A stretch of DNA of 64,000 nucleotides from Perna viridis. Taxonomy: Eukaryota. Shown here piece after piece: positions 262-51,500 of the stretch. Under the pieces are notes generated by a model. The model ran no database searches and had not been told where the DNA came from. It saw only the letters and a list, made by a program, of their open reading frames with translations. The stretch lies in contig CM074523.1 in the NCBI GenBank assembly GCA_037379345.1, positions 32,565,678-32,629,677 on the forward strand, written 5' to 3'. How positions within the stretch are numbered: the stretch's first letter is position 1; the number at the start of each line of letters is the position of its first letter. The position numbers were made by a program, and so were the translations under genes.

Positions 262-501
262 GTGATGTCTGTCCCATGGGTCAATACTGTCTGGAAGGGA
301 GCACTAATGGTACCTATTGTCCTCCCGGAACTTACCTCAATACAACAGCGAGCACCGTCCTGTCCGACTGTCACACATGTCTACAAGGAATGTATTGTGC
401 TGGGTATGGGAACCCTGCAGCATCTGGACCATGTAGCACCGGGTTCTACTGTCCCACTGGAATGAATGTATCAACACCTGGAGAGTACACTTGTCCTCAA
501 G
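262..501 (+). CDS. exon w1
   Basis: AG/GT, phase 1-1; GDVCPMGQYC..YTCPQ. Confidence 0.9.
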
Positions 502-3500
502 GTGAGGTGTTCAGTTGAAACCTAGCCACATCATACCAAACTTAAAACTGAAAGTTGATGTTTTTTTCCTGAACATGCTGTACATGAAAACTCTCCCCCT
601 TTTATTGGGAAATTTTGTTAATTTCTTGCAATATGTAGGTAAAAATAACCAATAGTAACTTGGAATCTCCCACTTTAAAATCTCATGATCCAAAGTTACA
701 AGGTATGTTGATTATAGATAGGTTTCACTGTTTATAGATTAATCAAAATTGTTACAAATGACAAAGACATTTTATATACATAATGCCATTACAGGTCATC
801 ATTGTCCCTCTGGAAGCCATGAGCCAATCAGATGTGATTCAGGAACATACCAAGATGAGACAGAACAGGGAAGCTGTAAGATGTGTCCTGCTGGTTACTT
901 CTGTGACAACACCAAGGCTCCAGTAGTACTGTACAATAGCTCTGTTTGTGCTCTAGGTTAGTATGATTTCAGAAAACATGCATTTTATTGTGGCATTATA
1001 TATTTCCAAATTGGTCCTACATACATCTTTTATGTGTTTAAAATCCTAAGATATATGTTGCAATTTTTCCTATGCAAATGATGCTGAAATCAACAAAAAC
1101 AGAAAAAAACTGTCTAAACAAGATTAAGAATAACCTAGAAAGAGTTGTACTTAAGGTTTGACAGAAATTTCATTCATTTCTCAACTATTATTTCATTTCT
1201 TTTGACAGGATATTACTGCCCTGATGGTACAAAGTATGACAATGAGTTCCCCTGCCCCAATGGGACGTATAGTAATGCCACAGGTCTACAGTTGGAGTCT
1301 GACTGTCTTTTATGTCCAGGAGGGTATTACTGTGATCAAACGGCCCAGACTGATTACACCAAAGTGTGTGCAGCAGGGTAAGCTTTAAAGAGTTCAAAGG
1401 ACATGTAGTCGAAATGTGCAAGGCTACTTACCTTGTGGTAGGGCTCCTTGACCTTAAATTTGTGTAGCTTTTTGCTCTCTTCAGTAAGTTAGAAGCCATG
1501 ATAGCTCTTGAAATTCCTTAACCCAGTTAAGTAAATGTTTGCTATGTGACTATTTATTACCTGATTTGTCCAAGTGAGAATTATGACATCCTATCGTCCC
1601 GATGTTGCCATGGAAGAATTTGTCTCTACAAATTTGATAAACATAAAAGTACTTTTATATGTGGGAACTAGTTTTCATGGTTTAGGGAAAAGATATCAGT
1701 TCATTGATTCTTAAATTTGTGGATTTGATAACTCTATTGTACAAACAAATGAAAAATTTCCTTTTCATGGTTTACCAGACCCACAAAAACCACAAAAATT
1801 GGACCCCAGGAATGATAATACTTTCACAGTACATTTTTTAGACATGATAAATTGTTCTCATTTTCATTCCTGCCACACATTTACTGCAAGTTTTGGAAAC
1901 TGGATATTTTGTCTTGTTAATGTTAAAAATACTGAGGGCTCTATGGAGATTTTATTTGCTTTCAGATATTTCTGTAAACAAGGTGCTATAACAGGAACAC
2001 CAAACCAAGGACCTGATGCCGATGAATGTCCCGCAGGTCATTACTGCCCCATACAAACAGCTGAACCAATCAAATGTCCCCAGGGAACTTACTCAAATGC
2101 CACCAAACTAAAAGCTGAGAGTGAATGCTCAAACTGTACTGCAGGTAATAAAGTACAAGTCTTTGTAAAAATCAGGCTATATAGGAACAATCTGAAACAT
2201 GTGTCAAGTTTTAACCAACTGACTGTATAATTTCACTTAAAGAAGTCTTCTATATTTAAAATAACCACTATTTGATCTCTGTATCACTAATATTACAATA
2301 TTAGATGTTTGAGTTTTTGAGTTATCTTCCTTATATTAAAATGTTCAGTTGTTTGTACCGTATTCTTCTGTGTATACCGCACACTTTTTTTCAACTTTTT
2401 CTTTGCTCCAGAAGAGGGATGCGCGGTATACACCATAACAATGAGTTTCTAGATTTTTTTTTTGGAGACGCAATTTTCGGGAATCAGAACCAGTCGTCAA
2501 CTAAAGACAACATCGAGCCATTGTATTTTTGAGAACAGTTTTATGTGAAATAAACAAATAAAGGTTTACTGCTATTTAATAGTTGTTTTATCCAACAATG
2601 CTGTTTCCTTGCATTTCATAGTTTGTACGAAAAACCATGAATAGCTTCTTATTGCTCTCTCAAATCAAGTTATCTAATTATAACTTCTTCACCTGTGTGC
2701 GGTGGAGCCTTAAATACACAATACCGGGAGTGCCAACCTGTCCTCGTGGCCATTGTCATTTAATTATCAAATAACAAAGGAGCAATTTAAAAGGTGAAAA
2801 AATTATTACTAATCCTTTAATCCGCTTGATGAACTGTTTCCAGATGTCATATATCAATACACAACTTGGCAAATTAAAACATCTTTTTATAAACGGCCAG
2901 ACTTGACGCCGTTGTTTTAGTGAATTACCTGATTTGTATTCGAACTGGAAATGTAAACATTTCAGCCGACTGAGATCCAATACATCACTATTTATAAACT
3001 ATTTGAATTAATAAATGGCTTGCAAATGCAGGGAAACACAAAAAATACTTCTATTTAAAAGATTAATGATGAAAAGATATGCATTTCGGGGAATTTACCG
3101 GAATCCTTTCATCTCAAAATGGTCTTCTGATGGTGATTTTTCCTCACTTCCCATTGCACGTTTTACACAGAAACTAACTTTTTTCGCCAATCTCCCTTGC
3201 CACGAAGGGGGTGCGCGGAATACACAGATGCGTGTAATACATGGAAGAATACGATATTTCAATGAAATTCATAACTAATTTTACCAAGTGATTTAGATAA
3301 TCTTGTCTTTTTTCTTGATTCTGATGGTACAAATACTCAAATAGTACTGTCAAAGATGTGGGATATTTCAAACCATATTTCATCCACTGCCTGACTCTTA
3401 CAAAGTCTTGACACTTAAGTATTTTTAAGTATTTTCTTTTTTAAATTATTGAATATGACAGGTGAAAATGATTTACAATAAGAGGGTGGATAAGAACATT

Positions 3501-6500
3501 TCAATTATGCAATTCTTTCATATCTCATGTTGCAGTACTTAAAACTGAATAACTTTACACACTTTTTTCATATGTAAATCAAAGATGTGCTCAATGTACA
3601 TGAAGTACTGTTAATTTAATTTTATAATTCAATATAAAAAAACTATTCTTTTGATGTGTCAGGTTATTTCTGTGAACGACTGGCTCTGCTTGAACCAGAA
3701 GGACTTTGTCAGGCTAAATACTACTGTCCAGAGGGTGCCACCAGAGCCACATTCCTGGATTGTCCAATGGGAGCGTACTGTCCAGCAGGAAGTGCCATGC
3801 CCACACTTTGTCCAAATGGTACTTACTCTAATGTGACAAATTTGGAGGCCAAGTCCGAGTGTACTATCTGTCCCGGAGGATATTACTGTGAGACAGAGGG
3901 TCTGGAGAATCCTACTGGACTGTGTAAAGAAGGTAGGTGAAATAGAGGCTAAAGGTCATTTGTATCTGTATTCAAAATCCAACAAAATTGTATCATCATT
4001 TACACATTAAGTCAAGACAATTGTCTAAGTACTTGTTTACTCTTAGCTACATATAACTGAAGGTAACTTTTTTCTTATGCTGTAAATTTTTTTGTAAAAT
4101 TGTTTGCATAATTTGCTTTGCTCTCGATTAACTGTTTTTGGAAGTCTGAAATATGAGAAGAAAGTATTTAATCTTCGCAATCCTAGTTTGCTCAGTTACT
4201 TTTGTTTCTTCATATGTATTACTTTGGTTATTTCCTGTTATTTAGTGTGTGTGTCTGTTTTCCCTGTCTTTACCCTTGGGTTGCATTCTTTTGATTTCAA
4301 CTAGAATCTTGATTGACCCTTGGTTACTTTTTGATTACTTTATGTTAAACATTAATCATGGAAGAGAGGTGAAATTAGTGAATTTACCTGCAAAACCTAG
4401 ATACATATAGGTACAATGTTTTTTTTTTTGTTTTTCTATAGGTTATTACTGCCCTGATGGGACAGTCAACAGAGAACCACCTGCAACTTTCTGTCCTATC
4501 GGCCATTATTGTCCAGAGGGAGTAGCTGCTGCCATACCATGCAGAAACAATACAGAGGTGAGTTATCTCCCCTCTCTACCACTCTCTCCCAGTTTCTTAC
4601 AAAGTCCTAGAGTAAGACTAAGAAATGATTGAGTAGATGCTTCTTTACCATCCAGTAACAATGAAAAGGGGGTTTCTTTCTTATCTTTTACGCTCTTTCG
4701 CCATTTTCACTTTGGGATGAGCTAAATGGTTATTGTCTTAGGTTCAGAAATCTACTATATTTAAGTCAGCCACATTTTGCATTGTATAGATATCTTCGTA
4801 TATCATTGCAGTATTGTCTGTTCCTTTTTTATTTTTATTTCAAATTTTTTAGAACAATCACACCCATGCAGTTGAATGCTATCCTTGCCCAGCAGGATTT
4901 TACTGTGCAATCTCTGGTCAAAGTGAGATTTGCCCTATGGGTTACTATTGCCCAGCAGGAACTGGGTTGGACTGGAAAGCTTGCCCAAGAGGAACCTACA
5001 GTGATGTCACTGGACTTTATGTTGAAAGCCAATGTAAACCTTGCCCTGCTGGCAAGTTCTGTGATGGGGAACATCTCACAACATGGTCTGGTAAGAAATG
5101 TTGTTTGGACCTTCTCAAAATATAATTTAGACATATAATAAGTAAAGTCATATGATATGTAAGCTGTTCAATTAAAACTTCTTTTAAGCATGATTTCAAT
5201 AATATAATAATGTGTTGGTGATGGTTTTGGTATACAAGCATCCATTCTGTACATGGAAATATCTAATTTCAATACCATATTTACATGAGGTCACTTGCCA
5301 TTTATTGCAGAGAACTTATCAAGTTTCTCATGTTTTCATTCTGACTTCATATTATAAGTAGACAACTACAGCTTGTACCATGTATATATTTTTTGATTAA
5401 GTGGTATTCAAATTTTCTTTACATTTTCAGGTAAATGTGCTGCTGGTCATTGGTGTATGCAGGGTATAGACAGAGAGTATCCAAATGGGCTGAACCAGAC
5501 AAGTCCTCTAAACAATACCTGTTATGACGACAGAGAGCTCGGTTATGGTGGACTGTGTTTCCGTGGCCATTATTGTACAGTTGGTTCATCATATCCTACA
5601 GTGTGTGAGAACGGGACATATGCCAACGTCGAAGGTCTAGAGTCATGTGATCAATGTCCACAAGGTATGGTCTAACATATAGTAAGGAATATATTGGATT
5701 ATATACATAAGATAGGTTTGCATTTTAGTTAAACTCTTGTGAAAAAACGCATTAACAATATTATTGTTATAAGTGGGGGGGGGGGGGGTTGGGGCAACAG
5801 TTTTCCATATAAACAACTCAATAAAACTTAATTCCCTAGGAAAAGCTCTGAAAATCAACAATTGTTTAATTGTCTTGCAGTGTCATTCATAAATGTAGAG
5901 TTTGTTTATAATAAATATGTATATACCCGTTTCTGTATGTCATGGTTTTTTAATTACTACATGGAAAATCACAATAAGGGCACATGGATTTTGATGAAAT
6001 TCAACATGATGTTTCCAAATTGTCTGTTTGCACAACTGAAAAAAAGTTCTTACCAGTCGCATTGAAGTGTAAACCATGCTTGCCTATTAGAGGTCAAACA
6101 AGGACAATATTTAACAACTTCTTCTTGGATATTGACAACAGCCTTTATTGTAGGTACCATACATGATTGTGAATATCAACCAAGTGATGAACATTCTTTT
6201 TCTATTTTGTTTACTTGCAGTACTAATTTTTGAAATTTCATTCAATCCTGACAGACATATTCAAATTCATTTTCAAAAACTTTCAGGTTACTACTGTCCA
6301 CAAGGAACAGCTAACTACACTGATTTCCCTTGCCCAACTGGTTACTATTGCCAAGCAAGTACACAGAACTGGAACCAGTATCCATGTACAGCAGGAACAT
6401 TTAACAACCTGACCATGAGGACATCTAGTATTGACTGTATCAGTTGTACAGGTAAGGGAGAATAACTCTTTGATTGATGTTGTAATTTTTTAAACAATTT

Positions 6501-9500
6501 CTGCCGAGCTAAGATGTTTTTCATTTCCAGGGAAAAACTATAATTACAAACTTAAATTCTTCATTATGCTTGTACATACAAACAAACAAACATTCATCTC
6601 TATAAGTAGGTGTATGAAAAAAAATGTTTTTGAACTTATGAGGTAATCCTTCACCTTCAGAGGTTGTAAATAGTTACTTGTGCCTCTCTTTTTTCTTAGG
6701 TGACCAGAACTGAACCAAGCCACAAAACTTTAAAATCAATGAAATATTTATCTTATATTTTAGGTGGCTACTACTGTGATATCAATGGACTCTCAGAACC
6801 AACTGGTCCATGTGCACCAGGCTACTACTGTGATGGTGGCTCCACTACAGCAATGCCATCTGGTGTTGGTGGAAATCAGTGTACCACAGGAAGTTACTGT
6901 CCTGAGGCCTCAGCTAATCCAACACCTTGTGACCCTGGATATTATTGTGCTAACAATCTGTTGAATGAAACTTCAGGAAAATGTTCACCTGGTTACTATT
7001 GTACAAGTATGGCTACTGTAGCTAATCCCACAGATGGAACAACAGGTACCAGTCACTCATTACTTTTAACATATTATTTTGAAGTTGGATTATGTGCTTT
7101 GCTATATTCTAATACAACAGTACATGAAACATTTTAATGTTATATCTTTTGACTTCTTTATATTCTGCCAAATGAAGGTACCGTCGAACCTTGATATGTC
7201 AAACTCGAAAGAGTTGAAATCTTGGATAACTCGAACTAATTGACTAAAAAAATAATTGTGAATTATTTTAAGGTAACCTTGTTATTTTTGTAGGCAATAT
7301 TTGTCCTGAGGGTGCTTATTGTCCTGAGGGAAGTCCCTCCCCAACACTCTGTCAAGCTGGTTACTACCTCAACAGCACAGGAAATGATGATGTCAGTGAC
7401 TGTATTCTCTGTACTCCTGGAAGTTACTGTGACGGCAGCGGAAACAGTCAACCCGATGGGCTATGTAGTGCAGGGTGGTATTGCCCAGGTGGACAAGATA
7501 CAAATATGCCCACTGGATTTAATTGCACTTTAGGTCACTATTGCCCAGAGGGAAGTTCAGCACCTCTACGCTGTGCCTCTGGAACTTACCAAGATGAGTT
7601 AGGACAGTCAGACTGTAAGGGTTGTCCAGCAGGATATTATTGTGATAATGTAATGGATCCTGTTATACTATATAATGACTCATATTGCCCAAAAGGGTAC
7701 TATTGCCCAGAGAACACAACAATGTCATCTCAATACCCTTGTCCTGCAGGAACATTCAACAATGTTACCCATCAGATCAGTGAATCAGATTGCCAGCAAT
7801 GCTCTGGTGGGCAATACTGTGACCAGCCAGGACTAAGTGAACCTGTTGGAGCATGCATGCCTGGCTATTTCTGTGACTTTGGAGCCAACAGTTCCACTCC
7901 CTCTCAACCACCTAATGCAGATATTTGCCCAGAAGGATTTTATTGCCCGTCAGGCACAGTTACATCCCAGTCCTGCCCACCAGGCACATTTAACCCAACC
8001 ACCGGACGACAGAGTGTGGATGAGTGTACCAACTGTACATCAGGGTTCTATTGTCCCAACTACAATCAGACTGTTGCTACAGATCTCTGTCAAGCTGGTA
8101 CGTAAATTGAAGTGTCACAATAACTTTTTATTTAATCATAAGAAAAATGCAATTTTATTTGCCGGTTATTTTAGATTTCTGTATCACAATTCTGATGTTA
8201 TTTTTTTTTCACAAATAAAAATATCGTTGCATTTAATTTGTATTGAATATATCACAGATTTTAAAAGTTTAAGAAAAATAAAAAAAGAAATTAAAAAAAA
8301 TGTTGGTATTATTTGGGTTTTAATTAGTGAAAATGTTCTTTTCCAGGATACTACTGTCCAAGCAAAGCTGATATAGCTGCATTCATTGTATGCCCAGCTG
8401 GGTCCTACTGCCCAGCAGGAAGTGGTTCACCCAACCTGTGTCCAGCAGGAACATTTTCTAACCAGACAGAATTGACAGCTGAAGCACAGTGTGCAAACTG
8501 CACTGGTGGAAACTACTGTCCTAATCCAGGTCAATATCTCTCTTACTTGTACTCTTAGGCCATAGTTTTTATTTTTATTTTTTTTTAACCCTTTCACCCT
8601 AAATTCTGACAAACTGGAAAAAATAAAATTGATATTGTTGAATTTATTTTATTTTTTCATGCAGAAAAAATAAAATTTTTGATAAAGAAAATTACTCCAT
8701 AAAAGAATCTGAATTTTGATATTTTTGATATAGTAATTTGTTGCACATTGTTTTTCAAATTCAAATCTTTTCAAGTTAAAATATCTACAACTGTCACGTA
8801 TCTAGTGAAATAAGAAAAATACATACTTTTGATCTTTGCAAGCTATGTTATGAAGAAGAAAAAACTGCAGTTGGATATTTTTTTCCCTCCTGCCCCAAGG
8901 TTTCATCAAAAAGTTTTGTTAAACTTAAAATATAATAACTATAGCCTTATGTTCATAAAGTTATCTCCCTTAACACATTACATAATCTGTGCTCATTATA
9001 GGTTTTTTACAGTCTCTATATCCCACCACTGCTACCAAAATATTATTGTTTTAGCAAAGTCTTTCTGATTACAGGAATGACAGATACAGGATATCCATGT
9101 TGGGGAGGATATTACTGTCCAACAGGGATTTCAGAACCAAATCCAGTAGGATATATCTGCCCACAAGGCATGCATTGCCCAAATGGTAGTGAAATTTACA
9201 AGGTGATTTAAATTGTGACTTATTTGTGCTTTAGAATTACAATACATGTACTTTACAATGACTCATATTGCCCAGAAATTTACAAAAAATAGTTTTTAAG
9301 TATGGAAACAGGCATGAACGAAGAAAATCTATTTTAAAAATTCAAACCAAATTAGCAAGCCCTTTTTCAGAACACATGTTTTTTTCTCTCTAACACTGTA
9401 AGATTGAAAAGAAAATTTACCAGTAGCTTTCAAGCCAATCTTTAGTTTGTCTGTTTTCTTTGTAAACTCAGTAGGCTTTAACTTCCAATTAAAACTTTAA

Positions 9501-39500: not shown

Positions 39501-42500
39501 CGTTTGCATGATATCTTGAACTGTGTCTCCCCTTTCCCAGTCCCTTGCTTATCTCCCCTTTCCCAGTCCTTATCTGTTTCCTGTTTTAATACTTAATAGC
39601 ATGATATGGTGTGCAAGATCTTGTTTAAATCTTAAAATGAGAGGAAGTAAGGACTTTGTCGATTTACATGGAATACTTTTTTAATGTTTCAGTGCTGGGT
39701 GGTATTGTACAGAAGCATCGACCATGACCATGCCATCAAATCCTGTCGAGGGTGGAAGATGTTCAGTTGGTCAATATTGTCCTGAGGGTAGTGAAGCTCC
39801 CATTGAATGTGATGGTGGAAAGTATTGCCAGACTGTTGGATTATCCCTGCCTACTGGTATCTGCTTGGCAGGTTAGTGTCTTGTACAAAGAGTTGACATA
39901 AGGTTGATTTGAAGGTCAGACGGTCAAATAAAGTAATTTTTTTAGAATGAAACCTGTATTCTGAGTAGGCAGTTCAGTTATATTCAGTGAATATTTAAAG
40001 ACTTAGAGTCAAGAAAGTGTTCTCCTGCAAGAAATTGTTTCTTTGTGCTATGATATCTATTAGAATTAAGCATTGCTATTTTAGTCTTTTTTATCATGCA
40101 AATTGTCATGGAATGCCTAAAATATCCAGTCAATCAATATATTTTTTTCTCTATTTTTTCAGGATACTACTGTAACATCAGTGCTTTTATAGCCACACCA
40201 CCCCCAAGCACCTCTGGTGACAGATGTCCAAAGGGTCATTATTGCCCTGCCCAGAGTATTGCCCCAACACCATGCCCCATTGGTTATTACTATGATAGAA
40301 CTGGAGCTCAACAGGAATCTGACTGTGTCATCTGTACTAAAGGTCAGTTGTTTTTTTTTTATGAAAGGTTATGTGTACTTTTTTTTTGTTATGCACTGCA
40401 TTTGTACTTGATAAAGTCGTATTTACTTTACATTTCTAAACTGATGATTAGCTGGTTGAGTTTTTGTACTACATGAAATTTTGTAAAAGGTTCTTCCAGT
40501 TATCATAATAACATTGATTTTCAGTGTTCTTAATATGGCACCTAACAAATGAGGAATCATTTAAAATCTGAGAACAAAGTATTATTTGAATTTGGAATTA
40601 TTTTGGATTTTAGAAAATAAGTGAAAAAATTATTTATAAAACTTACCCCTACTAATGGGGTTAGTCATGCCGTCATGACTAAGGGAGGTTAGTAAGTTTC
40701 CTTGACTTTTGTTATTCAACAAACTCTGTCCCTTAGTCATGCCAGCATGACTAACCTCTTTAGTAAGGGTTAGTTTTACTAATTTTATTTTTGGTCATTT
40801 TCTTAATTCCAAAATAATTCCAAATTTAAACAATTGAGTTTCTTAGTGTTTGAAATGAAAAGTAAAATTTCATATAAGTAAAACCTTACCTGTTATCACT
40901 CCCACATTAGAGGGAGACTCCCACTAAATCAATGAGAATTTTAGAATCCCCCACATTAAAATGTAAGATTTATAGGAGGTTTTTGGTTAAAATTAATGCT
41001 TTTTCTGTGACAAATACTAAATAATTTAATTCTTACATAAAACAATTTGCTTTTGGGTGAAAATCTTCCACATAAAATAGTGTCAGTGGGGGTAGAATCT
41101 CCCACATGAACTTCCTCAAAGGTTAACAGGCAGAGTGAAGGAATATTTTTATGAGTAACAATAGTACAAACCTATTTCTTCATAATGTAACACTGTTTGG
41201 CATTGGCTGTGTGCATACATGTATTGTAGATTATACCCAATAATGATACTTAATAAAAGTAGATCACCAAACTAGATTTGGAAATAATCATATATGTACT
41301 TGTGTGTATCATCATATTACATTAAAATAGAATTGAAGAAAACGGAAAACATTTATCTTATTCTAGAACAATAACATTACGTGTCACAGAACTTTTTAAT
41401 TGTGCTCTTTGCAAATAAAAAACCTTTAATTTTCTATACATTTCCATACTTAGTTTTCCCACATATTGTCTCCTCTTGAATGCAATATTCTGTACAAATT
41501 TGCAAGATGCCTGAAAAAAATACTCCATTGCATAGTTTTGGTCTGCCTTAGAATCCATTATCCTATGCACCCTTCCGCCATATTGAAAAAAAAGTGATGT
41601 TTAATTTTAGGAAAATACTGTGGAAGCTACGGACTAGAGGCTGAAACTGGAGACTGTGCAGCTGGGTACTATTGTCCTGAAGGTCAAACAGTGGCCACAC
41701 CCGCCAATTACAGCTGTCCTCTGGGATACTTCTGTGTGGGTGGGAAGGAAATGCCAGAGCCATGCCCATCTGGAACTTATCAGGTATTCATAGGAGTTTG
41801 TTTCATATTCCTCAAACAATGTTTTAGGGGTATGTAGGAATCACTTACCTATGATTATTAATATTATTTTAATACTCCCATCCTACAAAATGAGATAAAA
41901 TATAGGAACACCTTTGTCCAAACTTAAGATTAAATTTCTTAGAAACTTTATGTGAAGATTAGACAAAGACATGCCTGAAGATTGATATATGCATCCTTTC
42001 TGTTCAATGTATTCTTCCTAAAATTTATTAAAAAATTTGCATCCATGTTAATTGAAGTTTTTGTGCAAACAAACAATACTTATTGCAGTTGCCTCTCACT
42101 GAAGAAAATTCAGATACAGTCAAATAAATGTAAACCAATTTGTGAAGAAAATGAAAATCCCTTTATTTACTGAAAACCTGTCTAAACCAGACAGTCCAAT
42201 TTTGACATTTGAAATACATGGTGTACCTATGTTAAACAACACTCCTGCCTATAGTGAACAAAACTTACAAAAAAATGGGGTTCAGTTTAGACAGGTTTCA
42301 ATGTACTTTTAACAAGGTCAATGATCCTAAACATGCCCCTGAATTGTAGTTCTGATATTTTTATTGTTTTAGGACGAACCAATACAAAGTACCTGTAAAA
42401 CATGTCCTGCAGGATATTATTGTAATGCTACATTCAGTCCTGTCATCAACTATGCCACTTATATCTGTCCAGAAGGATATTATTGCCCAGATGGAACCAG

Positions 42501-45500
42501 TTTTGATGATGAATATCCTTGTCCTAAGGGAACTTTTAACAACAGAACGGGTAATGTTTACATTGAACTTCTTGCCTTTAATGTGTATTTGGAAATTTGT
42601 TTTAGCTTTTTATATTTTCTGTGGTGAAGTCTTTGCAGAAACACACAAAAAAACTTTTTATTTTTATTTTCATGAAATATGGCCAAAAATAGACATACCT
42701 GTTAACCCTCCCATATTTCAGTGGAGATTCCCACAAAATCAGTGAAAAATTTCGGACATCCCACAGAAATGTTAAGATTTATGGGAGGGTTTTGGTTTAT
42801 ATTTTCAGTGACGAATACTTAATAATTGAATTCTTACATTTAAAAAAAATTGCTTTTCATCAAAATCTCCCACATAAAACAGTGTCAATGGGGGAGAATC
42901 TTCCACACGAATTGTTCCAAGGTTAACAGATATTATACAGACTGTTCCAAAGTTAACAGGTATGATTCTGACTGTTCCAAGGTTAACAGGTATAATACAC
43001 ACTGTTTTTTAAGGTTAACAGGTATGATTCAGACTGTTCCAAAGTTAACAGGTATGATTCAGACTGTTCCAAGGTTAACAGGTATGATTCAGACTGTCAG
43101 AAAGTAGAATAAACAGATAATTTTAGTCTTGAGAAAATATACAGCAGTTAATAAGATCACTATATGTATTTATGCATACAAGACCAGTTGATTCTCATGT
43201 TCTTAATTTAGATCTTATAAAAAGGTTATTTTGCATTGTCACTTTAACTCTTAATGCATATTGAATAAAATATTATGGATGTTTGCTGGTCATGTTCAGC
43301 CATTTTTTGTCAGCTTTTCAGACTCTGCTGGTTTTATCCATTTTGTATAGCATTTATATTTTTTACACAGTGATCCCCACTTTTCTTTTCATAATTTCAT
43401 TAAACACACCTTAAAATTAAAATGTTTTATTTTGAGAAGTTTAAATGAAATCCTTGTTTTTTTCTTCATTGTTTTTAATAGATAAAACCTACTAAGATAA
43501 AACCTTATACAAGAGAAATCCTTTTCCCAGCAAAATTTCAAATGCGTATATCTTAAAAATGAGCTCACTGACTATTTTTTCTTCTTATATTGTTCTAGCG
43601 TGAAAAATAATTTTGCAACCCATTAAAATCCTTGATATTCTTAGACCAGCGAACATTCTTTAAATAGGCTTAAACATATGTTTAAGTAATGCTTTGTTAA
43701 GATTTTAATCTATCTTTTGTTTCATTTTAGGACTGAACAGTACACATGAATGCTCTGAATGTGTTGGTGGAATGGCATGTGACATGGATGGTTTGACCTA
43801 TCCCATGAGGCCTTGCTCAGCTGGATATTTCTGTAGACAGAGTGCCGACTCCACAACACCTAGTTTAGGTAAGATTGACAGTATGTTTGCATTGTAATGT
43901 GCTGTGTTTTTTTATAAATCTTATATTTGTGTGTAGTAGGTTGTTTCTACTAAGTGTTCTACTGAGGTGAATGTTATTTCAATGACTTAGCACTTGTTTT
44001 CTCATATTAACTTTGATATCACTATTGTGAGAGCCAAAAAATGATAGCATTGATGTATGGTATTGTATTGGGTAGTTACTTGTTTTAAATTGTAAGTTTT
44101 CAAAATTTTCAAAAATGGTCATTTGGAATATTGAAAGAGTAATCAAGGGAACCAAGGTTATAGCGGTAATCAAAAGAATGTAATCCAGGGAAAAAAGGAG
44201 ATTGTTTAAATTACAGGGAAATCTAACTCCATGAGGTCTCTGAATAAATAAAAAAAAAATCATTCAGTTATTTGCATAATCAGTTTCCTTATCCACAAAG
44301 GAAATTATTTTTATGTAGTCCAAAAGGTACTCCAAAAGTGATGAAATTTAAAAATCTCTTCTATTTTAGTATTTGATACTTGAGCTATTTTGTAGACTTG
44401 TGTCAAACAAATCCTATGGCATGGCTTCCTCAGGATGCATTAACGAAAATTGGATTATTGTAGGTTCCTTGGCCGACCGATGTTCAGCAGGATCATACTG
44501 TCCAGAGCAGACGGCTGAACCAATCGGCTGTCCTGAGGGTAGTTATAGTCCTGCCGTGGGGCTCCAGATGGAAAGTCAGTGTATCAATTGTACAGGAGGA
44601 TATTATTGTAATGAAACAGGTTTGTAGGCTTAAATCTGTCTTTGTTTAAGTAAACATTGGACTCTGGTAACACCCTCATTCATTTACTTTAAAAAGTACT
44701 CTAGCTGACAGCTTCCAAAACCAAAGCGTCATACTTTATATTGGTTCTTTAATGAGCTTAGCTCACAGTTTTTCTAGTTAAATTACCTAATTCAGGATTT
44801 ACCTTTATTGTTATTATTGTCACATGTCGTAGTATTTATTTAGGTTTAACTTCAGGACTTACCTTTAATGTTATAATGGTCACATGGTGTCTTATTTATT
44901 TATGTTTAACTTCAGGACTTACCTTTATTGTTATGGTGTCTTATTTATTTAGGTTTAACAGCAGTTGTAGGACAGTGTCTCCCATCGTATTACTGTCCTG
45001 TTGGCTCCAAGGTATCCACTGAGATAATTTGTACGGCTGGTCACTACTGTCCACTGGGTACAGAGACACCTGTCCCATGTCCTGCTGGAACGTTCTCGGA
45101 CATCCAGGGACTCAGTATGGAGTCAGAATGTGCTAACTGTACTAAAGGATATTATTGTGAGACTTCTGGCTTGACAAATGTTACTGGTCCTTGCAAGGAA
45201 GGTAATCATTAAAGATAGGTTGTTCTAATGTAGCACTCGATGTTTAGAGCTTCTACAGATTTTACACAACTGAAATCCTTTATATTTTTTATATACTTTC
45301 CATTAAGAAATCCTGGAATGTTTAAATTGAAATTGTGGGTCTTATATACCGTGCTCCAAGGAAATTCTGCAAAATGGTGAAAAAGATCAGACCAAGATTC
45401 AATTGGACCAAGCAGCTGTCAAGAATTTTCTGAAACATTTCAGGTTTCATTTCATACTAATAAGATATGACATTTTGAAAATAGGAAGCAACTGTAATCA

Positions 45501-48500
45501 CGCTCAAAATGATTTTTTTTAAGGACAGGATTTTGAATTTCAGGATTGAAATTAGTGTTTTTTAGAAAATATTTAACTAGTTATGGTTTTGTGTTTCAGG
45601 ATACTATTGTCCAACAAAATCCAGTGTAGAAACTCAGATTATCTGTCCAGAAGCTAGACATTGTCCAACAGGGAGTGCGGAACCACAGGAATGTCCCGAT
45701 GGAATGTTTGTTGATTATCAAGGGGCTGCAACTTGCTCTGTCTGTCCAGAAGGTAATCAAGTATATCTATAAAGTTTTATATGTGGAATTGAGGGGATCC
45801 AAAATAGAAATTAATGAAATACTTTTAATTCAGGAAATGTTTGCTTTGTCTTCTTTCTTTTGATTTTTCTAATCAATTAAATTTTTGTTAATGATTTTGA
45901 ACTTGATTTTTTATGAAATATTTCAGGCTACTATTGTATACCAGAACTTTCAATCGAGGGAGATGCCTCATCAGCCAAAACAATCTGTCCCCTCGGATAT
46001 TTCTGTCCTAATGGGACAGGACATGACTGGCAGCCTTGTCCTGCTGGAACTTTCGGAAACAGTCTTGGACTTAAGAAAGCAGAGGATTGTACACCATGTA
46101 CTGGTGGACAATATTGTGAAGGTATGGAAGCTACCGGGTTGGTTTTATGATGAAGGAGGGGGGTAGATGGAATTTGAATTGAAAAATGAAAGGACTTAAC
46201 CAGACATGTGTGATAAAGTATCCAATACAAGAAATTAGTCATATTACAAAAGGCTTAAGATAGAAAAAAAAACAAAATAGGACTGACATTACAACAACAA
46301 AAAACAACCTTAACCACTACACCACTGAAATCAAAGTCTTTGAAATGTCTTAAATGTTAACAAATCCATCTATGACCTTTCATTCTCAAGGAATTATGAA
46401 CTATGATGTCTTTGAAATACCAATGAAAGAGGAGGTATTGTGCTGCAGAAGATTAATCGTCCTCCATGAAAATTTGTCTTTTCCAGAAGATTGGAATGTT
46501 CTCTTTATGAGGTTAGATATACATTTTGTTTGTTTTCCAGGAACTAACTTGACCTCACCAACTGGAGACTGCTGGCCTGGATATTATTGTATCTCAGGTG
46601 TTGACAAAGCCAACCCTTTGATGTTAAATGACTCTCAATGTCCTACTGGAACCACACATCCAATCATTGGCCATCTTTGTCCAGCAGGTCACTATTGTCC
46701 TTCTGGTACAGACTATCCCATTGGTTGCCCAGCTGGGTCATACCAAGACCTGACCAATCAGGACTACTGTAAGGCCTGTCCTTTGGGTCATTATTGTTAT
46801 GCCAACACATCAGACTACGCTCCAAATATTTGTCCTGGTGGATATTATTGTCCAATCAACACAACTGATTTATACGAGTTCCCATGTCCACCTGGTACCT
46901 TTAACAATTTGACCCAACAACACAGTATAGATTCATGTGAGTCATGCACTCCTGGCATGTATTGTCAAGGTCATGGAAATGCTTACCCAACCGGAAACTG
47001 TTCTGCAGGATGGTACTGTACCAATGGATCTGATGCTTCTCAGGTTAGTGGTTATCTTCATGACTTTTCAAGTAAGGTGTTGTTATAGAATTTTTCGTTT
47101 GAAATATTTGAATTTTATCTTTTATCCTCCCTAAATTCGAATTTACCAAGAATTATGGATTTTAGTCTTTACCCATGAGTTTTGAAAGAGGGTGCTAACT
47201 TCATAAAAAATCTGGGGATCCTTCTTCAAAAATGTTGACTTTAATAATAATAATTATGCTAATAATAACAGTTTACTTTATTTTAAGAGGATAACACAGT
47301 AAGTTAACAAGAACTAATCTTCCTGAAGCCCTCATGCAATACAAATGAAGACAGAAATTATGTACACATAATAGTCACAGTTGAATGAGTTTAATAGTGT
47401 TTGATGGTTTTCGAAGGGAGTGTGATTGCAACTGATCAAACTCCCTTGTGTAGGGCCCTGAAAAATTAAGGCTTTTATTAAAATATCAGTCTTAGATTTC
47501 TTTATGAAATCAGAGTCTGGTCATGAAAATCTCACATTACAGTCTATGGCCAGTGGATAAAAATGGTTATGATGAAAAACAACAAATGTACCAGCATATA
47601 ACCTTAATACAAAATAATACTTTCTGAGGTCACCATAAGGTCTTCAACAGTGTATGCATGAAAAATTATTTGATTTTTAATTGTCATTAACTTTTGTCAT
47701 TTCAGCCCACATTGACTGGTGGACAGTGTTTAGCAGGATTCTTCTGTCCAGAAGGATCATACGAAATGCAGAATTGTACAGCTGGACAATATTGCTCAAC
47801 AGATGGACTTGAAATCCCTGATGGGTACTGTGATGCTGGATATTATTGCCCAATTGGCTCAACATCTCCACAGCAAATTGATTGTCCAGTGGGCCACTAT
47901 TGCCCACTAGGAAGTGACTTGCCTATGCCTTGTGGTAATGGAACATATGCACCCAAAATACGACAGCAGCAGTCTTCAGATTGTAAATCATGTGATGGAG
48001 GGTATTACTGTAATGGCACTGGACTCAATGCTGTATCTGGACAATGTGATGCAGGTAAAAGGCAACAATGTCTGTCTGTCTATCCTTACATGTACATGTA
48101 ACTCTTCATGTAAGCGTGTCCAAGTAACAGTATTCACAAATTAAAGTACTTCCTCATCAAGACTCTACAATAACTTCAGCCTTTAGAGTTCAATGATTAA
48201 TACATATTTATCTCTAAACACTAAGAATTGAAATGAATAAGCTTCCATTTTTTTCAGGTTTTTACTGTCCACCTGGCCAAACCCAGCCCAACCCATATGA
48301 CTACAGATGTCCCCTAGGACATTACTGTTTGGTAGGGACCCACACCTTTTACAGATGTCTGAATGGATTCTTTCAGAATGAGAAAGGAAAGTCATCTTGC
48401 AAGATATGTACTGAAGGTAAAGAAACAATATCTTTCACAGAGGTTATATTCAATATTTCAGTGCTTTTACATGACTGCCATACTCAGTACAAAGCCCCAC

Positions 48501-51500
48501 AGCTTTATACAAATTAGCACAGTACACAGTAAATAGCTTTGGTGATTTGTAATGAGTGTGTAGCTGAGTGTTATATAGTAAATCGAGAAGTAGATATATA
48601 TAGGTCTACAGAAGACATACTCCACAATAGAAGCAGATATACAGCAGATATATATAGGTCTATAGAAGATATACTCCACAATAGAAGCAGATATACAGCA
48701 GATATATATAGGTCTGCAGAAGACATACTCCACAATAGAAGCAGATATACAGCGGATATATATAGGTCTACAGAAGACATACTCCACAATAGAAGCAGAT
48801 ACATATAGGTTTGCAGAAGACATACTCCACAATAGAAGCAGATATATATAGGTCTACAGAAGACATACTCCACAATAGAAGCAGATATACAGCATATATA
48901 TATATAGGTCTGCAGAAGACATACTCCACAATAGAAGCAGATATACAGCAGATATATATAGGTCTGCAGAAGACATACTCCACAATAGAAGCAGATATAC
49001 AGCGGATATATATAGGTCTGCAGAAGACATACTCCACAATAGAAGCAGATATACAGCAGATATATATAGGTCTGCAGAAGACATACTCCACATATTTTCG
49101 GGAGTTATTTATTTTTGTTGTTTTTTTTTTTTAATAAATTACAAAAAAAATCACAGCAAGTAAGTCCCTTTATTATGCAACACACATCCTTTATTATACA
49201 ATTTAGATTTTAGATGATATGTAACTCATGAAGATAAATAGCAACAATATTGAATGCATATTATTTTATTTATTATTATTAATTTTAGTGTTAGACCTGT
49301 ATAGCATGAAACTGATTAAATTGAATTTTAATTTTAGATTTTAGTATCATTTGATTGAAAATCCCAATTTAAATTGTGACAGTAAAGTGGTTGTTTGATA
49401 GATTGATTGATTATGTCTTAATGTCCTATGGCAAATTTTTTATGAATTTCATTCAAGAATGATTGACAAATCAAACAGACTTTGTTTTGACACACTGAGC
49501 TGGGTTAGCTCACATCTTATGGGTTTGGAAAGGGTCCCTCATTAATGATTGATCTGCTAATCTTGATACAGATGTTTGAACATTTGTGGGTTTTTTATTT
49601 ATAACTGCCTTAGCTTTGTTTAAACAACTCTACTTGTCCTTTCTATGATTTTTCATTTCCTTCTTTTTCAGGATATTATTGTGATAACAGTATAGAACCC
49701 ATTGGGGACCTCACTAACTACACATGCCCACTTGGGTATTACTGTCCTAATGGAACTGAGACAGCCACACAGTATCCCTGTCCTGCTGGTACCTTCAACA
49801 ACAGATCTGGCATGGTGTATGAGACAGACTGTCAGCCATGTACACCTGGGTATTACTGTCAGAACACTGGACTTCCAGAACCTCAGGGGCTTTGTTTCCC
49901 AGGGTAAGTTGACAGTGGCATAGTGTATGGAAGGGTCTGTCAGGCATGTCCTTTTAGGTATTACTGTTAGAATAATTGATTTCCAAATCCAAACTGTTTT
50001 CTAGTGTGAACATGGTTTTTGAGATAAGGAATGTTGAAAAGTAAGCAATCTCCCAATCAAGAGTCCAGAAATTTTGACAGCCCATGCTGGACATTTTATC
50101 AAACTTCAACTGACGTTTTTGTCAGTCTTTTAAGATGCTCAGATCGAAAATAAACTTTGTATGTAGTTATTTTAAGATAAATATGGGAAAGTGTGTTATT
50201 TCATCACATACTCTGTCTTTTACAAAATATCAGAGGAAGTGAATGAGTTTGGTTTCGACCACATGTGGACGTTCCAACATTTAAACAAAACATATCTCTT
50301 GGACTTTTTCATCACATAGGCAAACAGCCAATACTTCCGAGTGATGAAAAATATGTTGATTATTTATAAAAGAAAATCGCAAACACATTTTGTTTGTTGA
50401 CTTCTGTGTTAAAACGATTCAATCAACGAATTAATAATTACAAACTACATGTACGACTGATTTGAAGTTTCAGTTCCATGTGCTTTCGTTACCTCTGAAA
50501 GATCGGTGGGGAAATGGTGGACTTGTCAGTCTTTTTTCTTAATTAATAAATGTATAAAGATTCTCCGAGTTACTACAATTAATTCGTATAGGCAATGGGG
50601 CTGCACTTGTACCGTTAATTCAATTATATAATCAACTTATCAGTCACAGGTGGCTGCACATTGGCTGAAATTGACACAAACCTGTCAATTAATTTCCAAT
50701 AAACAATTAGGAGACTGGTAGACAGGATGTTTATACACTAATAAAACCACGCAGACTGTAATTTATAAGGGTTGACAATTTTTTTTAAGTCCGATATTGG
50801 AAAATTGTTGTAGGTCATTTGCAAAATTTGTCGGTCAATGACCGGCATTTTTTACCGTTTCCGGATCCATGCTCCTGATCCCAGACCTAATAAGTTTGAC
50901 ATACCTCAATATACTAGTATAATGCTTTTTTTTTCTAAGAACATACTATCGCCTAAAGGGTTGTGATTCTAAGGTTAGTGTACATGTACAGTGAAACCTG
51001 GGTAAATGGACCCTGGATCTTATTTCAAAAGATTTGCCAATGCTGGATTTCAAGCAAGTAGTCATTTATATATAACTGATTTTTTATTTGTTTTCAGCTA
51101 CTACTGCAATGGAAGTACTATTGACCCCAACCCAACAGAAGGACTTTGCCCAGTAGGCAACTATTGTCCAGAAGGCAGTTACCAGCCTACTGCTTGCCCA
51201 GATGGAACAATTGCTGTGTCAACAGGCAATGACAACCTTACTGATTGTGAGCTTTGTAAACCTGGCAACTATTGTACTCCTGCTAGCTCAAAGAATGGTA
51301 AGTTCACTATTTGAAAAGTAGTGTTTTCAAATTATTATGCAATTTTTTAATATCTTGTAGCTAATCTAGTCATTATTATTTACTGTGGAGATATTTGTTC
51401 TATTTTAAAAAAAATTATGTATTAAGATTAATTTTATTATACTTGTATCATAATATATTGGCTGAAAATTGGTGGTTTTAATTTTTTTACATAAGTGCTA

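What the first reader, a model, noticed from the sequence alone, without database searches (positions are those of the whole stretch)
262..49903. Hidden ~683-aa (~2,050-nt) super-repeat organises the ectodomain: at least 6 full copies and a partial 7th
Seen: landmark motifs recur at near-constant spacing in the spliced CDS. G(T/S/F)(Y/F)Q(D/N)...C..C..GY.C(D/N) followed by a hydrophobic patch appears in exons w2, w11, w19, w28, w37, w46/47 and w55/56, spaced about 2,035-2,080 nt apart. GTG.DW..CP.GT appears in w7, w15, w24, w33 (GTGRNE variant), w41 and w52. G(V/I/L)D(R/T/K) appears in w8, w16, w24, w33, w42 and w53. Unit starts are at about 262, 7294, 15227, 23972, 32290, 40216 and 47880. Inference: a titin/nebulin-like higher-order periodicity that could act as a molecular ruler or a regularly spaced binding scaffold. 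Domain annotation alone would not show it.
Basis: seen in the sequence. Interest (0 to 1): 0.8.

Follow-up and report, generated by a model that had tools for sequence, protein, structure and literature searches.

The report
Ten-module super-repeat in giant membrane protein
The window encodes the middle of a giant, transcribed cell-surface protein whose roughly 68-residue cysteine-rich modules are arranged in six complete head-to-tail copies of a ten-module, ~684-residue block; related proteins from a nemertean worm, a crinoid and a single-celled relative of animals have the same block, and its function is unknown.

Summary
My independent exon model has 72 plus-strand exons and no frame breaks. 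Transcript contigs from four studies confirm all nine junctions tested.

Exon-against-exon alignments show a short period of about 68 aa. Peaks twice as high fall at 686, 1367, 2050, 2730 and 3422 aa. In the six core copies, 55 of 60 modules are most similar to the module at the same position in another copy (about 5 expected by chance). Each block is 676-690 aa, with 72-74 Cys and 17-20 N-glycosylation sequons.

The gene is much larger than the window. It runs from about -39 kb to at least +81 kb, its mRNA contigs are 27-31 kb, and it has one membrane-spanning segment. Pfam sees only Ephrin_rec_like.

Homologues from Lineus, Anneissia, Intoshia, a frog and the ichthyosporean Chromosphaera keep the same block, in the same register, with different copy numbers. 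So the block is ancient, not a recent duplication.

The closest solved structure is the 26-nm cysteine-rich rod of Chlamydomonas mastigoneme protein MST1. The "ruler or scaffold" function is untested.

The parts
264..7044 (+). Super-repeat block 1: 684 aa in exons 1-10, with 73 Cys and 18 NxS/T sequons.
   Evidence: The block profile matches positions 1-693 at 1039 bits. Junctions from 4557 onward are confirmed by RNA contigs.
7296..15226 (+). Super-repeat block 2: 690 aa in exons 11-18 (first part of exon 18), with 74 Cys. Modules 1-4 are encoded by one 804-nt exon (7294-8097).
   Evidence: The single exon and the next four junctions are confirmed by RNA contigs.
15230..23971 (+). Super-repeat block 3: 676 aa, 73 Cys.
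   Evidence: Profile match to positions 1-693 at 1014 bits. Coordinates.
23975..31687 (+). Super-repeat block 4: 676 aa, 72 Cys. It carries the GTGRNE variant of motif 2.
32292..40212 (+). Super-repeat block 5: 690 aa, 73 Cys.
40219..47882 (+). Super-repeat block 6: 682 aa, 73 Cys.
47883..51140 (+). Partial block holding modules 1-3 (profile positions 3-204).
   Evidence: Modules 2 and 3 have nearest neighbours at the same position.
51147..56906 (+). Two further partial blocks: modules 1-4 (profile 3-305), then modules 8-10 (profile 507-669).
56842..58895 (+). Last cysteine-rich modules of the ectodomain (exons 64-67), outside the block register.
   Evidence: Exon model, translations and weak Ephrin_rec_like hits.
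59453..61493 (+). Juxtamembrane region with no Pfam match (exons 68-71).
   Evidence: Weak collinear tblastn matches to homologues P0001 and P0006.
61705..61893 (+). Exon encoding the single membrane-spanning segment, preceded by the conserved APDW motif. The exon end is approximate.
   Evidence: Translation. The same motif plus a hydrophobic stretch sits about 400 aa after the last Cys module in P0001, P0002, P0006, P0010, P0012 and P0032.
35286..36407 (+). Intronic minisatellite carrying copies of an exon end with its splice sites. I left it out of the coding model.
   Evidence: The permissive model picked 36-nt micro-exons here. The strict model is in frame without them. Not checked with RNA.

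Best explanation
What it is. The window holds the central ectodomain of a giant type I membrane glycoprotein. My model gives at least 7,432 aa, and the mRNA contigs are 27-31 kb. The protein is built almost wholly of Ephrin_rec_like (growth-factor-receptor or TNFR-type) cysteine-rich modules.

The block. Ten modules that differ in length and sequence (about 74-54-80-72-74-54-92-51-76-56 aa) form one block of 676-690 aa. The block stands six times head to tail, with partial blocks on both flanks.

Origin (shown). The array arose by tandem duplication of the whole ten-module block, and this happened long ago:
- The copies are only 44-50% identical.
- They are equally distant from one another at every lag.
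- They mostly do not share intron positions.
- Some copies pair with single copies in other species.
- The same block, in the same register, occurs in other animals and in the ichthyosporean Chromosphaera.

Function (inferred). Each block is a stiff, disulfide-laddered, N-glycosylated rod segment. The solved analogue, the 678-aa MST1 cysteine-rich domain, measures 26 nm. Block number would then set the length of a long cell-surface stalk in fixed steps and repeat the same surface pattern once per block. Strict conservation of module lengths, Cys counts and position-specific sequence argues that the block is a selected structural unit. What it binds, or with what it assembles, is not known.
For: Period and register:
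- Offset peaks lie at multiples of 684 aa.
- Module-lag similarity is 0.47 at lags 10, 20, 30 and 40 against at most 0.34 elsewhere, and the shuffle maximum is 0.369.
- 55 of 60 nearest neighbours are at the same position.
- The spacing of a module-defining Cys motif repeats as the same series, 74-56-78-72-74-55-95-53-134 aa, in all six blocks.
- The 693-position block profile matches six times from position 1 to about 693.
- Each block has 72-74 Cys and 17-20 sequons.

Transcription and splicing.

Age of the duplication:
- Block identities are 0.44-0.50 with no distance decay.
- Most intron positions are unique to one copy. One difference, seven residues apart with both introns in phase 0, is confirmed by RNA.
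- Block 1 pairs with the Lineus block (SH-aLRT 99) and block 3 with a P0005 block (94).

Conservation in other species:
- The period is about 684-706 aa in P0001, P0005, P0003 and P0006, with the same spacing series.
- Among 150 homologues, long profile hits start mostly at profile position 1 (212 hits in the first bin).
- The nearest window module has the same position for 8 of 10 Chromosphaera modules, 8 of 10 Lineus modules, 7 of 9 crinoid modules and 44 of 60 P0001 modules.

Fold:
- The AlphaFold2 model of exon 11 has pLDDT 94 and pTM 0.77.
- Foldseek's best matches are the MST1 cysteine-rich domain (E 1e-10, and 3e-20 for a whole block over about 780 columns), then ELAPOR1, 4-1BB and Eph receptor cysteine-rich domains.
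- MST1 is the only PDB sequence hit of the exon-11 profile.
- MST1 residues 1176-1853 form one 26-nm domain with 26 disulfides that mediates filament assembly (PMC11015965).

Topology: one membrane-spanning segment with a conserved APDW motif.
Against: - There is no functional evidence of any kind: no localisation, no partner, no phenotype.
- The rod geometry and the length per block are inferred from an analogue with 17-20% identity. The full-block model has pTM of only 0.38.
- The alignment behind the exon-11 model probably had its short rows stacked on one module.
- Copy number varies between homologues, and both flanks hold truncated blocks. This also fits a neutral history.
- The block tree is mostly unresolved: 15 of 33 inner branches are open.
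- Only 9 of about 100 junctions were checked with RNA. The upstream exon model is a little too long compared with the contigs (7,310 nt against 7,278 nt).
- Taxon labels of the homologues are the sources' own names and I did not verify them.
Confidence: 0.6

Rival explanations
1. A true extracellular ruler or periodic binding scaffold. The ~684-aa period would be matched to a periodic partner or to in-register self-assembly, as titin's period is matched to myosin and nebulin's to actin, or as MST1 rods pair to form mastigoneme filaments.
For: - Period and register are conserved across distant species while copy number varies.
- Block length, Cys count and sequon count are constant.
- The closest solved relative uses such a rod for antiparallel dimerisation and filament formation (PMC11015965).
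Against: - No partner or periodic structure is known.
- There is no localisation or assembly evidence.
- MST1 resembles this protein only at module level. The four-block profile does not find it by sequence.
- The protein is membrane-anchored with a very long cytoplasmic tail, unlike MST1.
Confidence: 0.17
2. A historical by-product. Block duplication was simply the easiest way to lengthen a module array. Only the individual modules are under selection, and the ten-module period has no meaning of its own.
For: - Homologues have between 1 and 6 full blocks.
- The array is flanked by truncated blocks, some with internal deletions.
- Non-holozoan members repeat smaller sub-blocks instead: modules 7-10 in Fabomonas, modules 1-4 in Kipferlia.
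Against: - Position-specific module identity and module lengths have survived since before the split from Chromosphaera, going by the source label.
- The six copies keep lengths within 676-690 aa and 72-74 Cys at only 44-50% identity.
- Block boundaries lie in the same register across species.
Confidence: 0.22
3. A recent segmental duplication, gene-conversion homogenisation or an assembly artefact produced the repeated blocks.
For: The whole locus does have a nearly identical second copy 393 kb downstream on the same contig. Duplication or assembly redundancy therefore occurs here, at a larger scale.
Against: - The blocks are only 44-50% identical at protein level.
- Intron positions and lengths differ between blocks.
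- Transcript contigs from four studies match the assembly at 99-100% across the block 1 to block 2 boundary.
- Some blocks pair with blocks of other species rather than with each other.
Confidence: 0.01
4. There is only the short-module periodicity, and the landmark motifs recur at ~684 aa by chance.
For: Every module hits every other module, so many offsets give alignments.
Against: - The peaks at multiples of 684 aa are about twice as high as any other.
- The lag-10 similarity exceeds all 2000 shuffles.
- 55 of 60 nearest neighbours are at the same position.
Confidence: 0.01

Closest known systems
Titin A-band (7- and 11-domain) and nebulin (7-module) super-repeats
   Same: Short modules are differentiated by their position in a longer block. 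Same-position modules are more alike across blocks than neighbours within a block. The period is constant and blocks stand head to tail (tested).
   Different: Titin and nebulin are intracellular sarcomere proteins built of Ig/Fn3 or 35-residue nebulin modules, and their periods match myosin or actin filaments (established knowledge). This protein is an extracellular, disulfide-rich, N-glycosylated ectodomain with a different fold and no known periodic partner. There is no common ancestry.
Cysteine-rich domain of Chlamydomonas mastigoneme protein MST1 (PDB 8wa2, 9b4h, 8tx1)
   Same: It is the best fold match (E 1e-10 for four modules, 3e-20 for a whole block over about 780 columns). It is the only PDB sequence hit of the exon-11 profile (E 9.5e-6). 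It is one continuous disulfide-laddered rod of 678 aa and 26 nm, close in residue number to one block (PMC11015965, PMC10602792).
   Different: MST1 has nine Ig-like domains, one cysteine-rich domain, a hydroxyproline PPII helix and no membrane anchor, and its homologues are reported only from green algae (PMC10602792). This protein has no Ig domains and no proline run. It has more than 100 modules, a membrane-spanning segment and a long cytoplasmic tail. Identity is 17-20%, and the four-block profile does not reach MST1.
Ephrin_rec_like (PF07699, formerly GCC2_GCC3) module proteins such as Eph receptor cysteine-rich domains, ELAPOR1 and TNFR-type cysteine-rich domains
   Same: The module type is the same by Pfam and by fold.
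   Different: Those proteins carry one to a few modules next to other domains. Here the module makes up nearly the whole ectodomain of more than 7,000 aa and is organised in ten-module blocks.
Unnamed giant homologues: Lineus longissimus XP_064629316.1 (named 'zonadhesin-like'), Anneissia japonica XP_033122761.1, Intoshia linei OAF72051.1, Discoglossus pictus KAM4652057.1, and two Chromosphaera perkinsii EukProt proteins
   Same: They share the block, the register and the spacing series. They share the APDW membrane-spanning segment and, in Chromosphaera and the frog, a C-terminal cytoplasmic domain.
   Different: Copy number differs (1-6 full blocks). One branch (P0001 and relatives) has a ~706-aa block. 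None has a described function. The name 'zonadhesin-like' has no support from domains.

Membership tests
Ephrin_rec_like (PF07699) cysteine-rich module proteins | Pfam PF07699 match above the gathering score of 23.1 bits | tested here: met
   Exon 11 scores 24.1 bits and exon 37 scores 29.1 bits. Homologues score 167 (P0006), 70.9 (P0005) and 79.2 (P0011) bits. Many other exons match only below the threshold.
Ephrin_rec_like (PF07699) cysteine-rich module proteins | TNFR or growth-factor-receptor type fold of short beta-hairpins tied by a disulfide ladder | tested here: met
   The AlphaFold2 model has pLDDT 94. Foldseek matches the MST1 cysteine-rich domain, ELAPOR1, 4-1BB and Eph cysteine-rich domains. 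This is a prediction, not a solved structure.
Titin/nebulin-type super-repeat architecture | Modules differ by position, and same-position modules are more alike across blocks than neighbours are | tested here: met
   55 of 60 nearest neighbours are at the same position. Mean similarity is 0.47 for the same position against 0.29 for different positions. Similarity peaks at module lags 10, 20, 30 and 40.
Titin/nebulin-type super-repeat architecture | The period is matched to a periodic partner filament | not testable with these tools
   No partner is known, and the test needs localisation and binding experiments.
Titin/nebulin-type super-repeat architecture | Ig/Fn3 or nebulin modules in an intracellular sarcomeric protein | tested here: not met
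   Only PF07699 is found. The repeats lie N-terminal to a single membrane-spanning segment, as in homologues that have signal peptides.
Mastigoneme protein MST1 | A long growth-factor-receptor type cysteine-rich rod domain | tested here: met
   Best fold match and the only PDB sequence hit of the exon-11 profile. The likeness is at module level only.
Mastigoneme protein MST1 | Nine N-terminal Ig-like domains and a C-terminal poly-hydroxyproline PPII helix (PMC10602792, PMC11015965) | tested here: not met
   No Ig family appears in whole-protein scans of five homologues. There is no run of four or more prolines in the 7,432-aa model.
Zonadhesin (the name NCBI gives the Lineus homologue) | MAM, VWD, C8 and TIL domains | tested here: not met
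   The Pfam scan of P0013 and of four other homologues finds only PF07699.

The most novel reading that the evidence does not exclude
The ~684-aa, ten-module block is a conserved structural quantum, roughly 26 nm by analogy with MST1, of an ancient holozoan cell-surface rod. The number of blocks would set the reach of the ectodomain in fixed steps. The repeated surface pattern would let the rods pair in register into hair-like or fence-like assemblies on cilia, microvilli or the glycocalyx. That would make it an extracellular counterpart of the sarcomeric rulers.
Probability: 0.15. Interest if true: 0.8.

Novelty: new member of a known kind. Interest (0 to 1): 0.5.

Why it matters
Super-repeats built by block duplication are a known way to make giant modular proteins, so the principle is not new. 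This case is of interest for four reasons.
- The protein family is deeply conserved, from animals to an ichthyosporean, with sub-blocks in more distant protists.
- The family is very large: 10,604 library proteins match one exon.
- It is transcribed as a 27-31 kb mRNA.
- It has, as far as I can tell, no described function. Two full-text searches of about 8.4 million papers found nothing on it.

The ten-module block gives a concrete unit for structural work. One block can be expressed on its own. It also gives a testable prediction: length and surface pattern should scale with block number. The link to the mastigoneme rod offers a first structural analogue.

The near-absence of shared intron positions between ancient block copies, together with an intronless homologue, also makes the gene a natural case for studying intron gain at AG|G sites.

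Tried and rejected
1. The first gene model filled frame gaps with 14-55-nt micro-exons. I replaced it with a stricter model that needs none.
2. Flanking copies cut at fixed 684-aa offsets ("SR0" and "SR7") were out of register. Profile matches show they are truncated blocks.
3. Protein alignment A2, with all 56 exons as rows, stacked 51 of them on one module, so I discarded it. Alignment A1, used for the exon-11 model, probably has the same fault in its short rows, so that model rests mainly on five full-length rows.
4. The block tree is a quick, mostly unresolved tree. I use only the few supported pairs.
5. Pfam finds nothing in the juxtamembrane exons, the cytoplasmic exons or the conserved C-terminal domain.
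6. Two literature searches found no paper on this family or its super-repeat.
7. The four-block profile A3 against PDB finds only 4-1BB at E 0.0046 and not MST1. I therefore claim no block-level homology to MST1.
9. I did not determine the organism. An unchecked note from this scan calls it a mussel.
10. Database and family searches used single exons by reference. The joined translation existed only inside sandbox scripts, for coordinates and self-comparison.

Full report
**Gene model**

The window is AT-rich (about 35% G+C). Its plus strand carries dozens of cysteine-rich open segments that all resemble one another.

I built a splice-aware dynamic-programming model from codon log-odds, homology coverage and re-estimated GT/AG site matrices. 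The strict version gives 72 exons with no frame break. Most are flanked by phase-1 introns.

Runs holding about 0.35 of the words of 4400-10399 fit spliced RNA. Contigs of 27,140-31,423 nt from four studies, laid on that stretch, reproduce all nine modelled junctions. They also show that 7294-8097 is a single 804-nt exon. The gene is therefore real, expressed, and correctly modelled where tested.

**The super-repeat**

I mapped exon-versus-exon blastp alignments onto cumulative coding coordinates.
- There is a short period of about 68 aa.
- Five dominant peaks lie at 686, 1367, 2050, 2730 and 3422 aa. Each is roughly twice as high as any other peak.

A regular expression for the core of the module (C-x2-G ... 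C-x2-C-x2-G) gives a spacing series of 74-56-78-72-74-55-95-53-134 aa. This series recurs six times almost unchanged.

I cut the six copies into ten modules each.
- 55 of 60 modules have their nearest neighbour at the same position in another copy, against about 5 expected by chance.
- Mean normalised similarity is 0.47 for the same position and 0.29 for different positions.
- By module lag, similarity is 0.47 at lags 10, 20, 30 and 40 and 0.25-0.34 elsewhere.
- 2000 shuffles of module order never exceed 0.369.

A 693-position profile of the block matches the model six times head to tail, from position 1 to about 693, at 1014-1057 bits.
- In window coordinates the blocks are 264-7044, 7296-15226, 15230-23971, 23975-31687, 32292-40212 and 40219-47882.
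- Each has 72-74 Cys and 17-20 NxS/T sequons.

It was run, and the super-period passed.

The array is flanked by truncated blocks.
- Upstream of the window: modules 1-4 and then 8-10, at about -6489 to -580.

With 60 kb of upstream and 30 kb of downstream sequence from the same contig, the model extends to about -39 kb. The protein is at least 7,432 aa.

Its N-terminal quarter has simpler 33-aa repeats. The upstream part of the model is approximate. It holds about 30 nt more than the transcript contigs allow.

Features after the last cysteine-rich modules:
- a region with no Pfam match;
- a single hydrophobic segment preceded by APDW (61705-61893), with the same motif and position in six homologues;
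- at +81.0-81.4 kb, a domain 45% identical to the C-terminus of a Chromosphaera protein and also similar to the frog protein.

**Relatives**

The joined protein was sent to no search tool. I searched with exon 11 alone, by reference. It finds 10,604 proteins at E up to 0.001, many of 4,000-7,800 aa.

Source names, where any exist, are:
- Lineus longissimus ("zonadhesin-like")
- Anneissia japonica
- Intoshia linei
- Discoglossus pictus
- Chromosphaera perkinsii
- Fabomonas tropica
- Kipferlia bialata

Pfam finds only PF07699 in them.

Evidence that the block is shared:
- Self-comparison shows the same super-period in P0001 (702-706 aa, six full blocks), P0005 (696 aa), P0003 and P0006 (about 684-692 aa).
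- The spacing series is the same.
- Long profile hits start overwhelmingly at block position 1.
- The nearest window module has the same position for 8 of 10 Chromosphaera modules, 8 of 10 Lineus modules, 7 of 9 crinoid modules and 44 of 60 P0001 modules.

The labelled non-holozoan members repeat sub-blocks instead: modules 7-10 in Fabomonas, modules 1-4 in Kipferlia.

In a quick tree, block 1 pairs with the Lineus block (support 99) and block 3 with a P0005 block (94). The rest is unresolved.

The ten-module block is therefore old, its register is conserved, and its copy number varies.

**Origin**

- The six copies are 44-50% identical and equidistant from one another.
- Intron positions are mostly unique to one copy.
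- 68 of 104 introns lie in phase 1 inside a glycine codon. 35 of these are in the Gly of C-x-x-G, which gives an AG|G junction.
- One difference between blocks 1 and 2, seven residues apart with both introns in phase 0, is confirmed by RNA.
- A close homologue on a metagenome contig is encoded without introns.

The simplest reading is tandem duplication of the whole block long ago, followed by independent intron gain or differential intron loss. I cannot tell which of the two applies.

**Structure and likely working**

AlphaFold2 models exon 11 (modules 1-4) with pLDDT 94 and pTM 0.77. The short rows of the input alignment were probably stacked.

A whole block from the intronless homologue gives pLDDT 80 and pTM 0.38. 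Its one long low-confidence stretch (residues 476-497) falls in the variable part of the block.

Foldseek's best matches are the cysteine-rich domain of Chlamydomonas MST1, then ELAPOR1, 4-1BB and Eph receptor cysteine-rich domains. MST1 is the only PDB sequence hit of the exon-11 profile, but a four-block profile does not reach it.

In MST1, residues 1176-1853 form one 26-nm rod with 26 disulfides. The rod dimerises antiparallel and builds the filament (PMC11015965). Its disulfides form a ladder with about 11 Å spacing and resemble the Eph cysteine-rich domain (PMC10602792).

By analogy, which is inference and not shown, each block is a stiff glycosylated rod segment of a few tens of nanometres. 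Block number would set the reach of the ectodomain in steps. Whether the period serves as a ruler, as a set of binding sites or for in-register self-assembly is open.

**Novelty and verdict**

Two full-text searches found nothing on this family or its block. The principle, a super-repeat made by block duplication, is known from titin, nebulin and other giant proteins. I therefore class this as a new member of a known kind.

The functional part is untested.

Noticed in passing
whole window; second copy at G000:C13:32958647-33022676: The whole locus has a second copy about 393 kb downstream on the same contig. It is about 100% identical at both ends of the window, and the offset differs by only 330 nt over 62 kb. 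It is either a very recent segmental duplication or an assembly redundancy.
   Followed up: partly
window 262-58895 (all introns of the repeat region): Intron positions are mostly not shared between the six ancient block copies. 68 of 104 introns sit in phase 1 inside a Gly codon (AG|G junction). Block 2 encodes modules 1-4 in one 804-nt exon, while block 1 uses four exons for the same modules.
   Followed up: partly
L012:1001-10534 (metagenome contig ERZ26858995 ctg126604): The homologue with the same module-spacing series (P0005, 3,177 aa) is encoded without any intron. A 5,454-aa Ephrin_rec_like gene call follows it 260 nt downstream, so both are probably one giant gene of an unidentified intron-poor eukaryote.
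   Followed up: no
window 35286-36407: An intronic minisatellite repeats an exon end together with acceptor and donor sites. A permissive gene model turns the copies into in-frame 36-nt micro-exons. I did not check with RNA whether any is used.
   Followed up: partly
window 32996-33293; 48533-49160; 54337-54989; 59677-60144: Tandem DNA repeats lie in introns and appear as repetitive open reading frames. One example is the FIVPLLFMCYYF-like run directly after exon 37. Copies at 48533-49160 are 80-97% alike at the translated level.
   Followed up: no
window 594-690, 998-1080, 50114-50366 / 55048-55372, 62200-62540: Short interspersed repeats in introns match dozens of places on many contigs of the genome at 72-86% identity. 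They are probably transposon fragments.
   Followed up: no
L010:7013-7393 (window +81013 to +81393, outside the window): A conserved cytoplasmic C-terminal domain is 45% identical to Chromosphaera P0003 residues 6006-6132, and about 30% identical to the frog homologue over a shorter overlapping stretch. It has no Pfam family. Exons at +67.4 to +71.0 kb encode repeats of a DP-x-TG ... P-I/V type. I modelled them as part of the same gene, but only from coding potential.
   Followed up: partly
homologues P0012 (Fabomonas) and P0008, P0010 (Kipferlia and unnamed): Distant members repeat only sub-blocks: modules 7-10 four times in tandem, or modules 1-4. The ten-module block therefore looks like a composite of older units.
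   Followed up: partly
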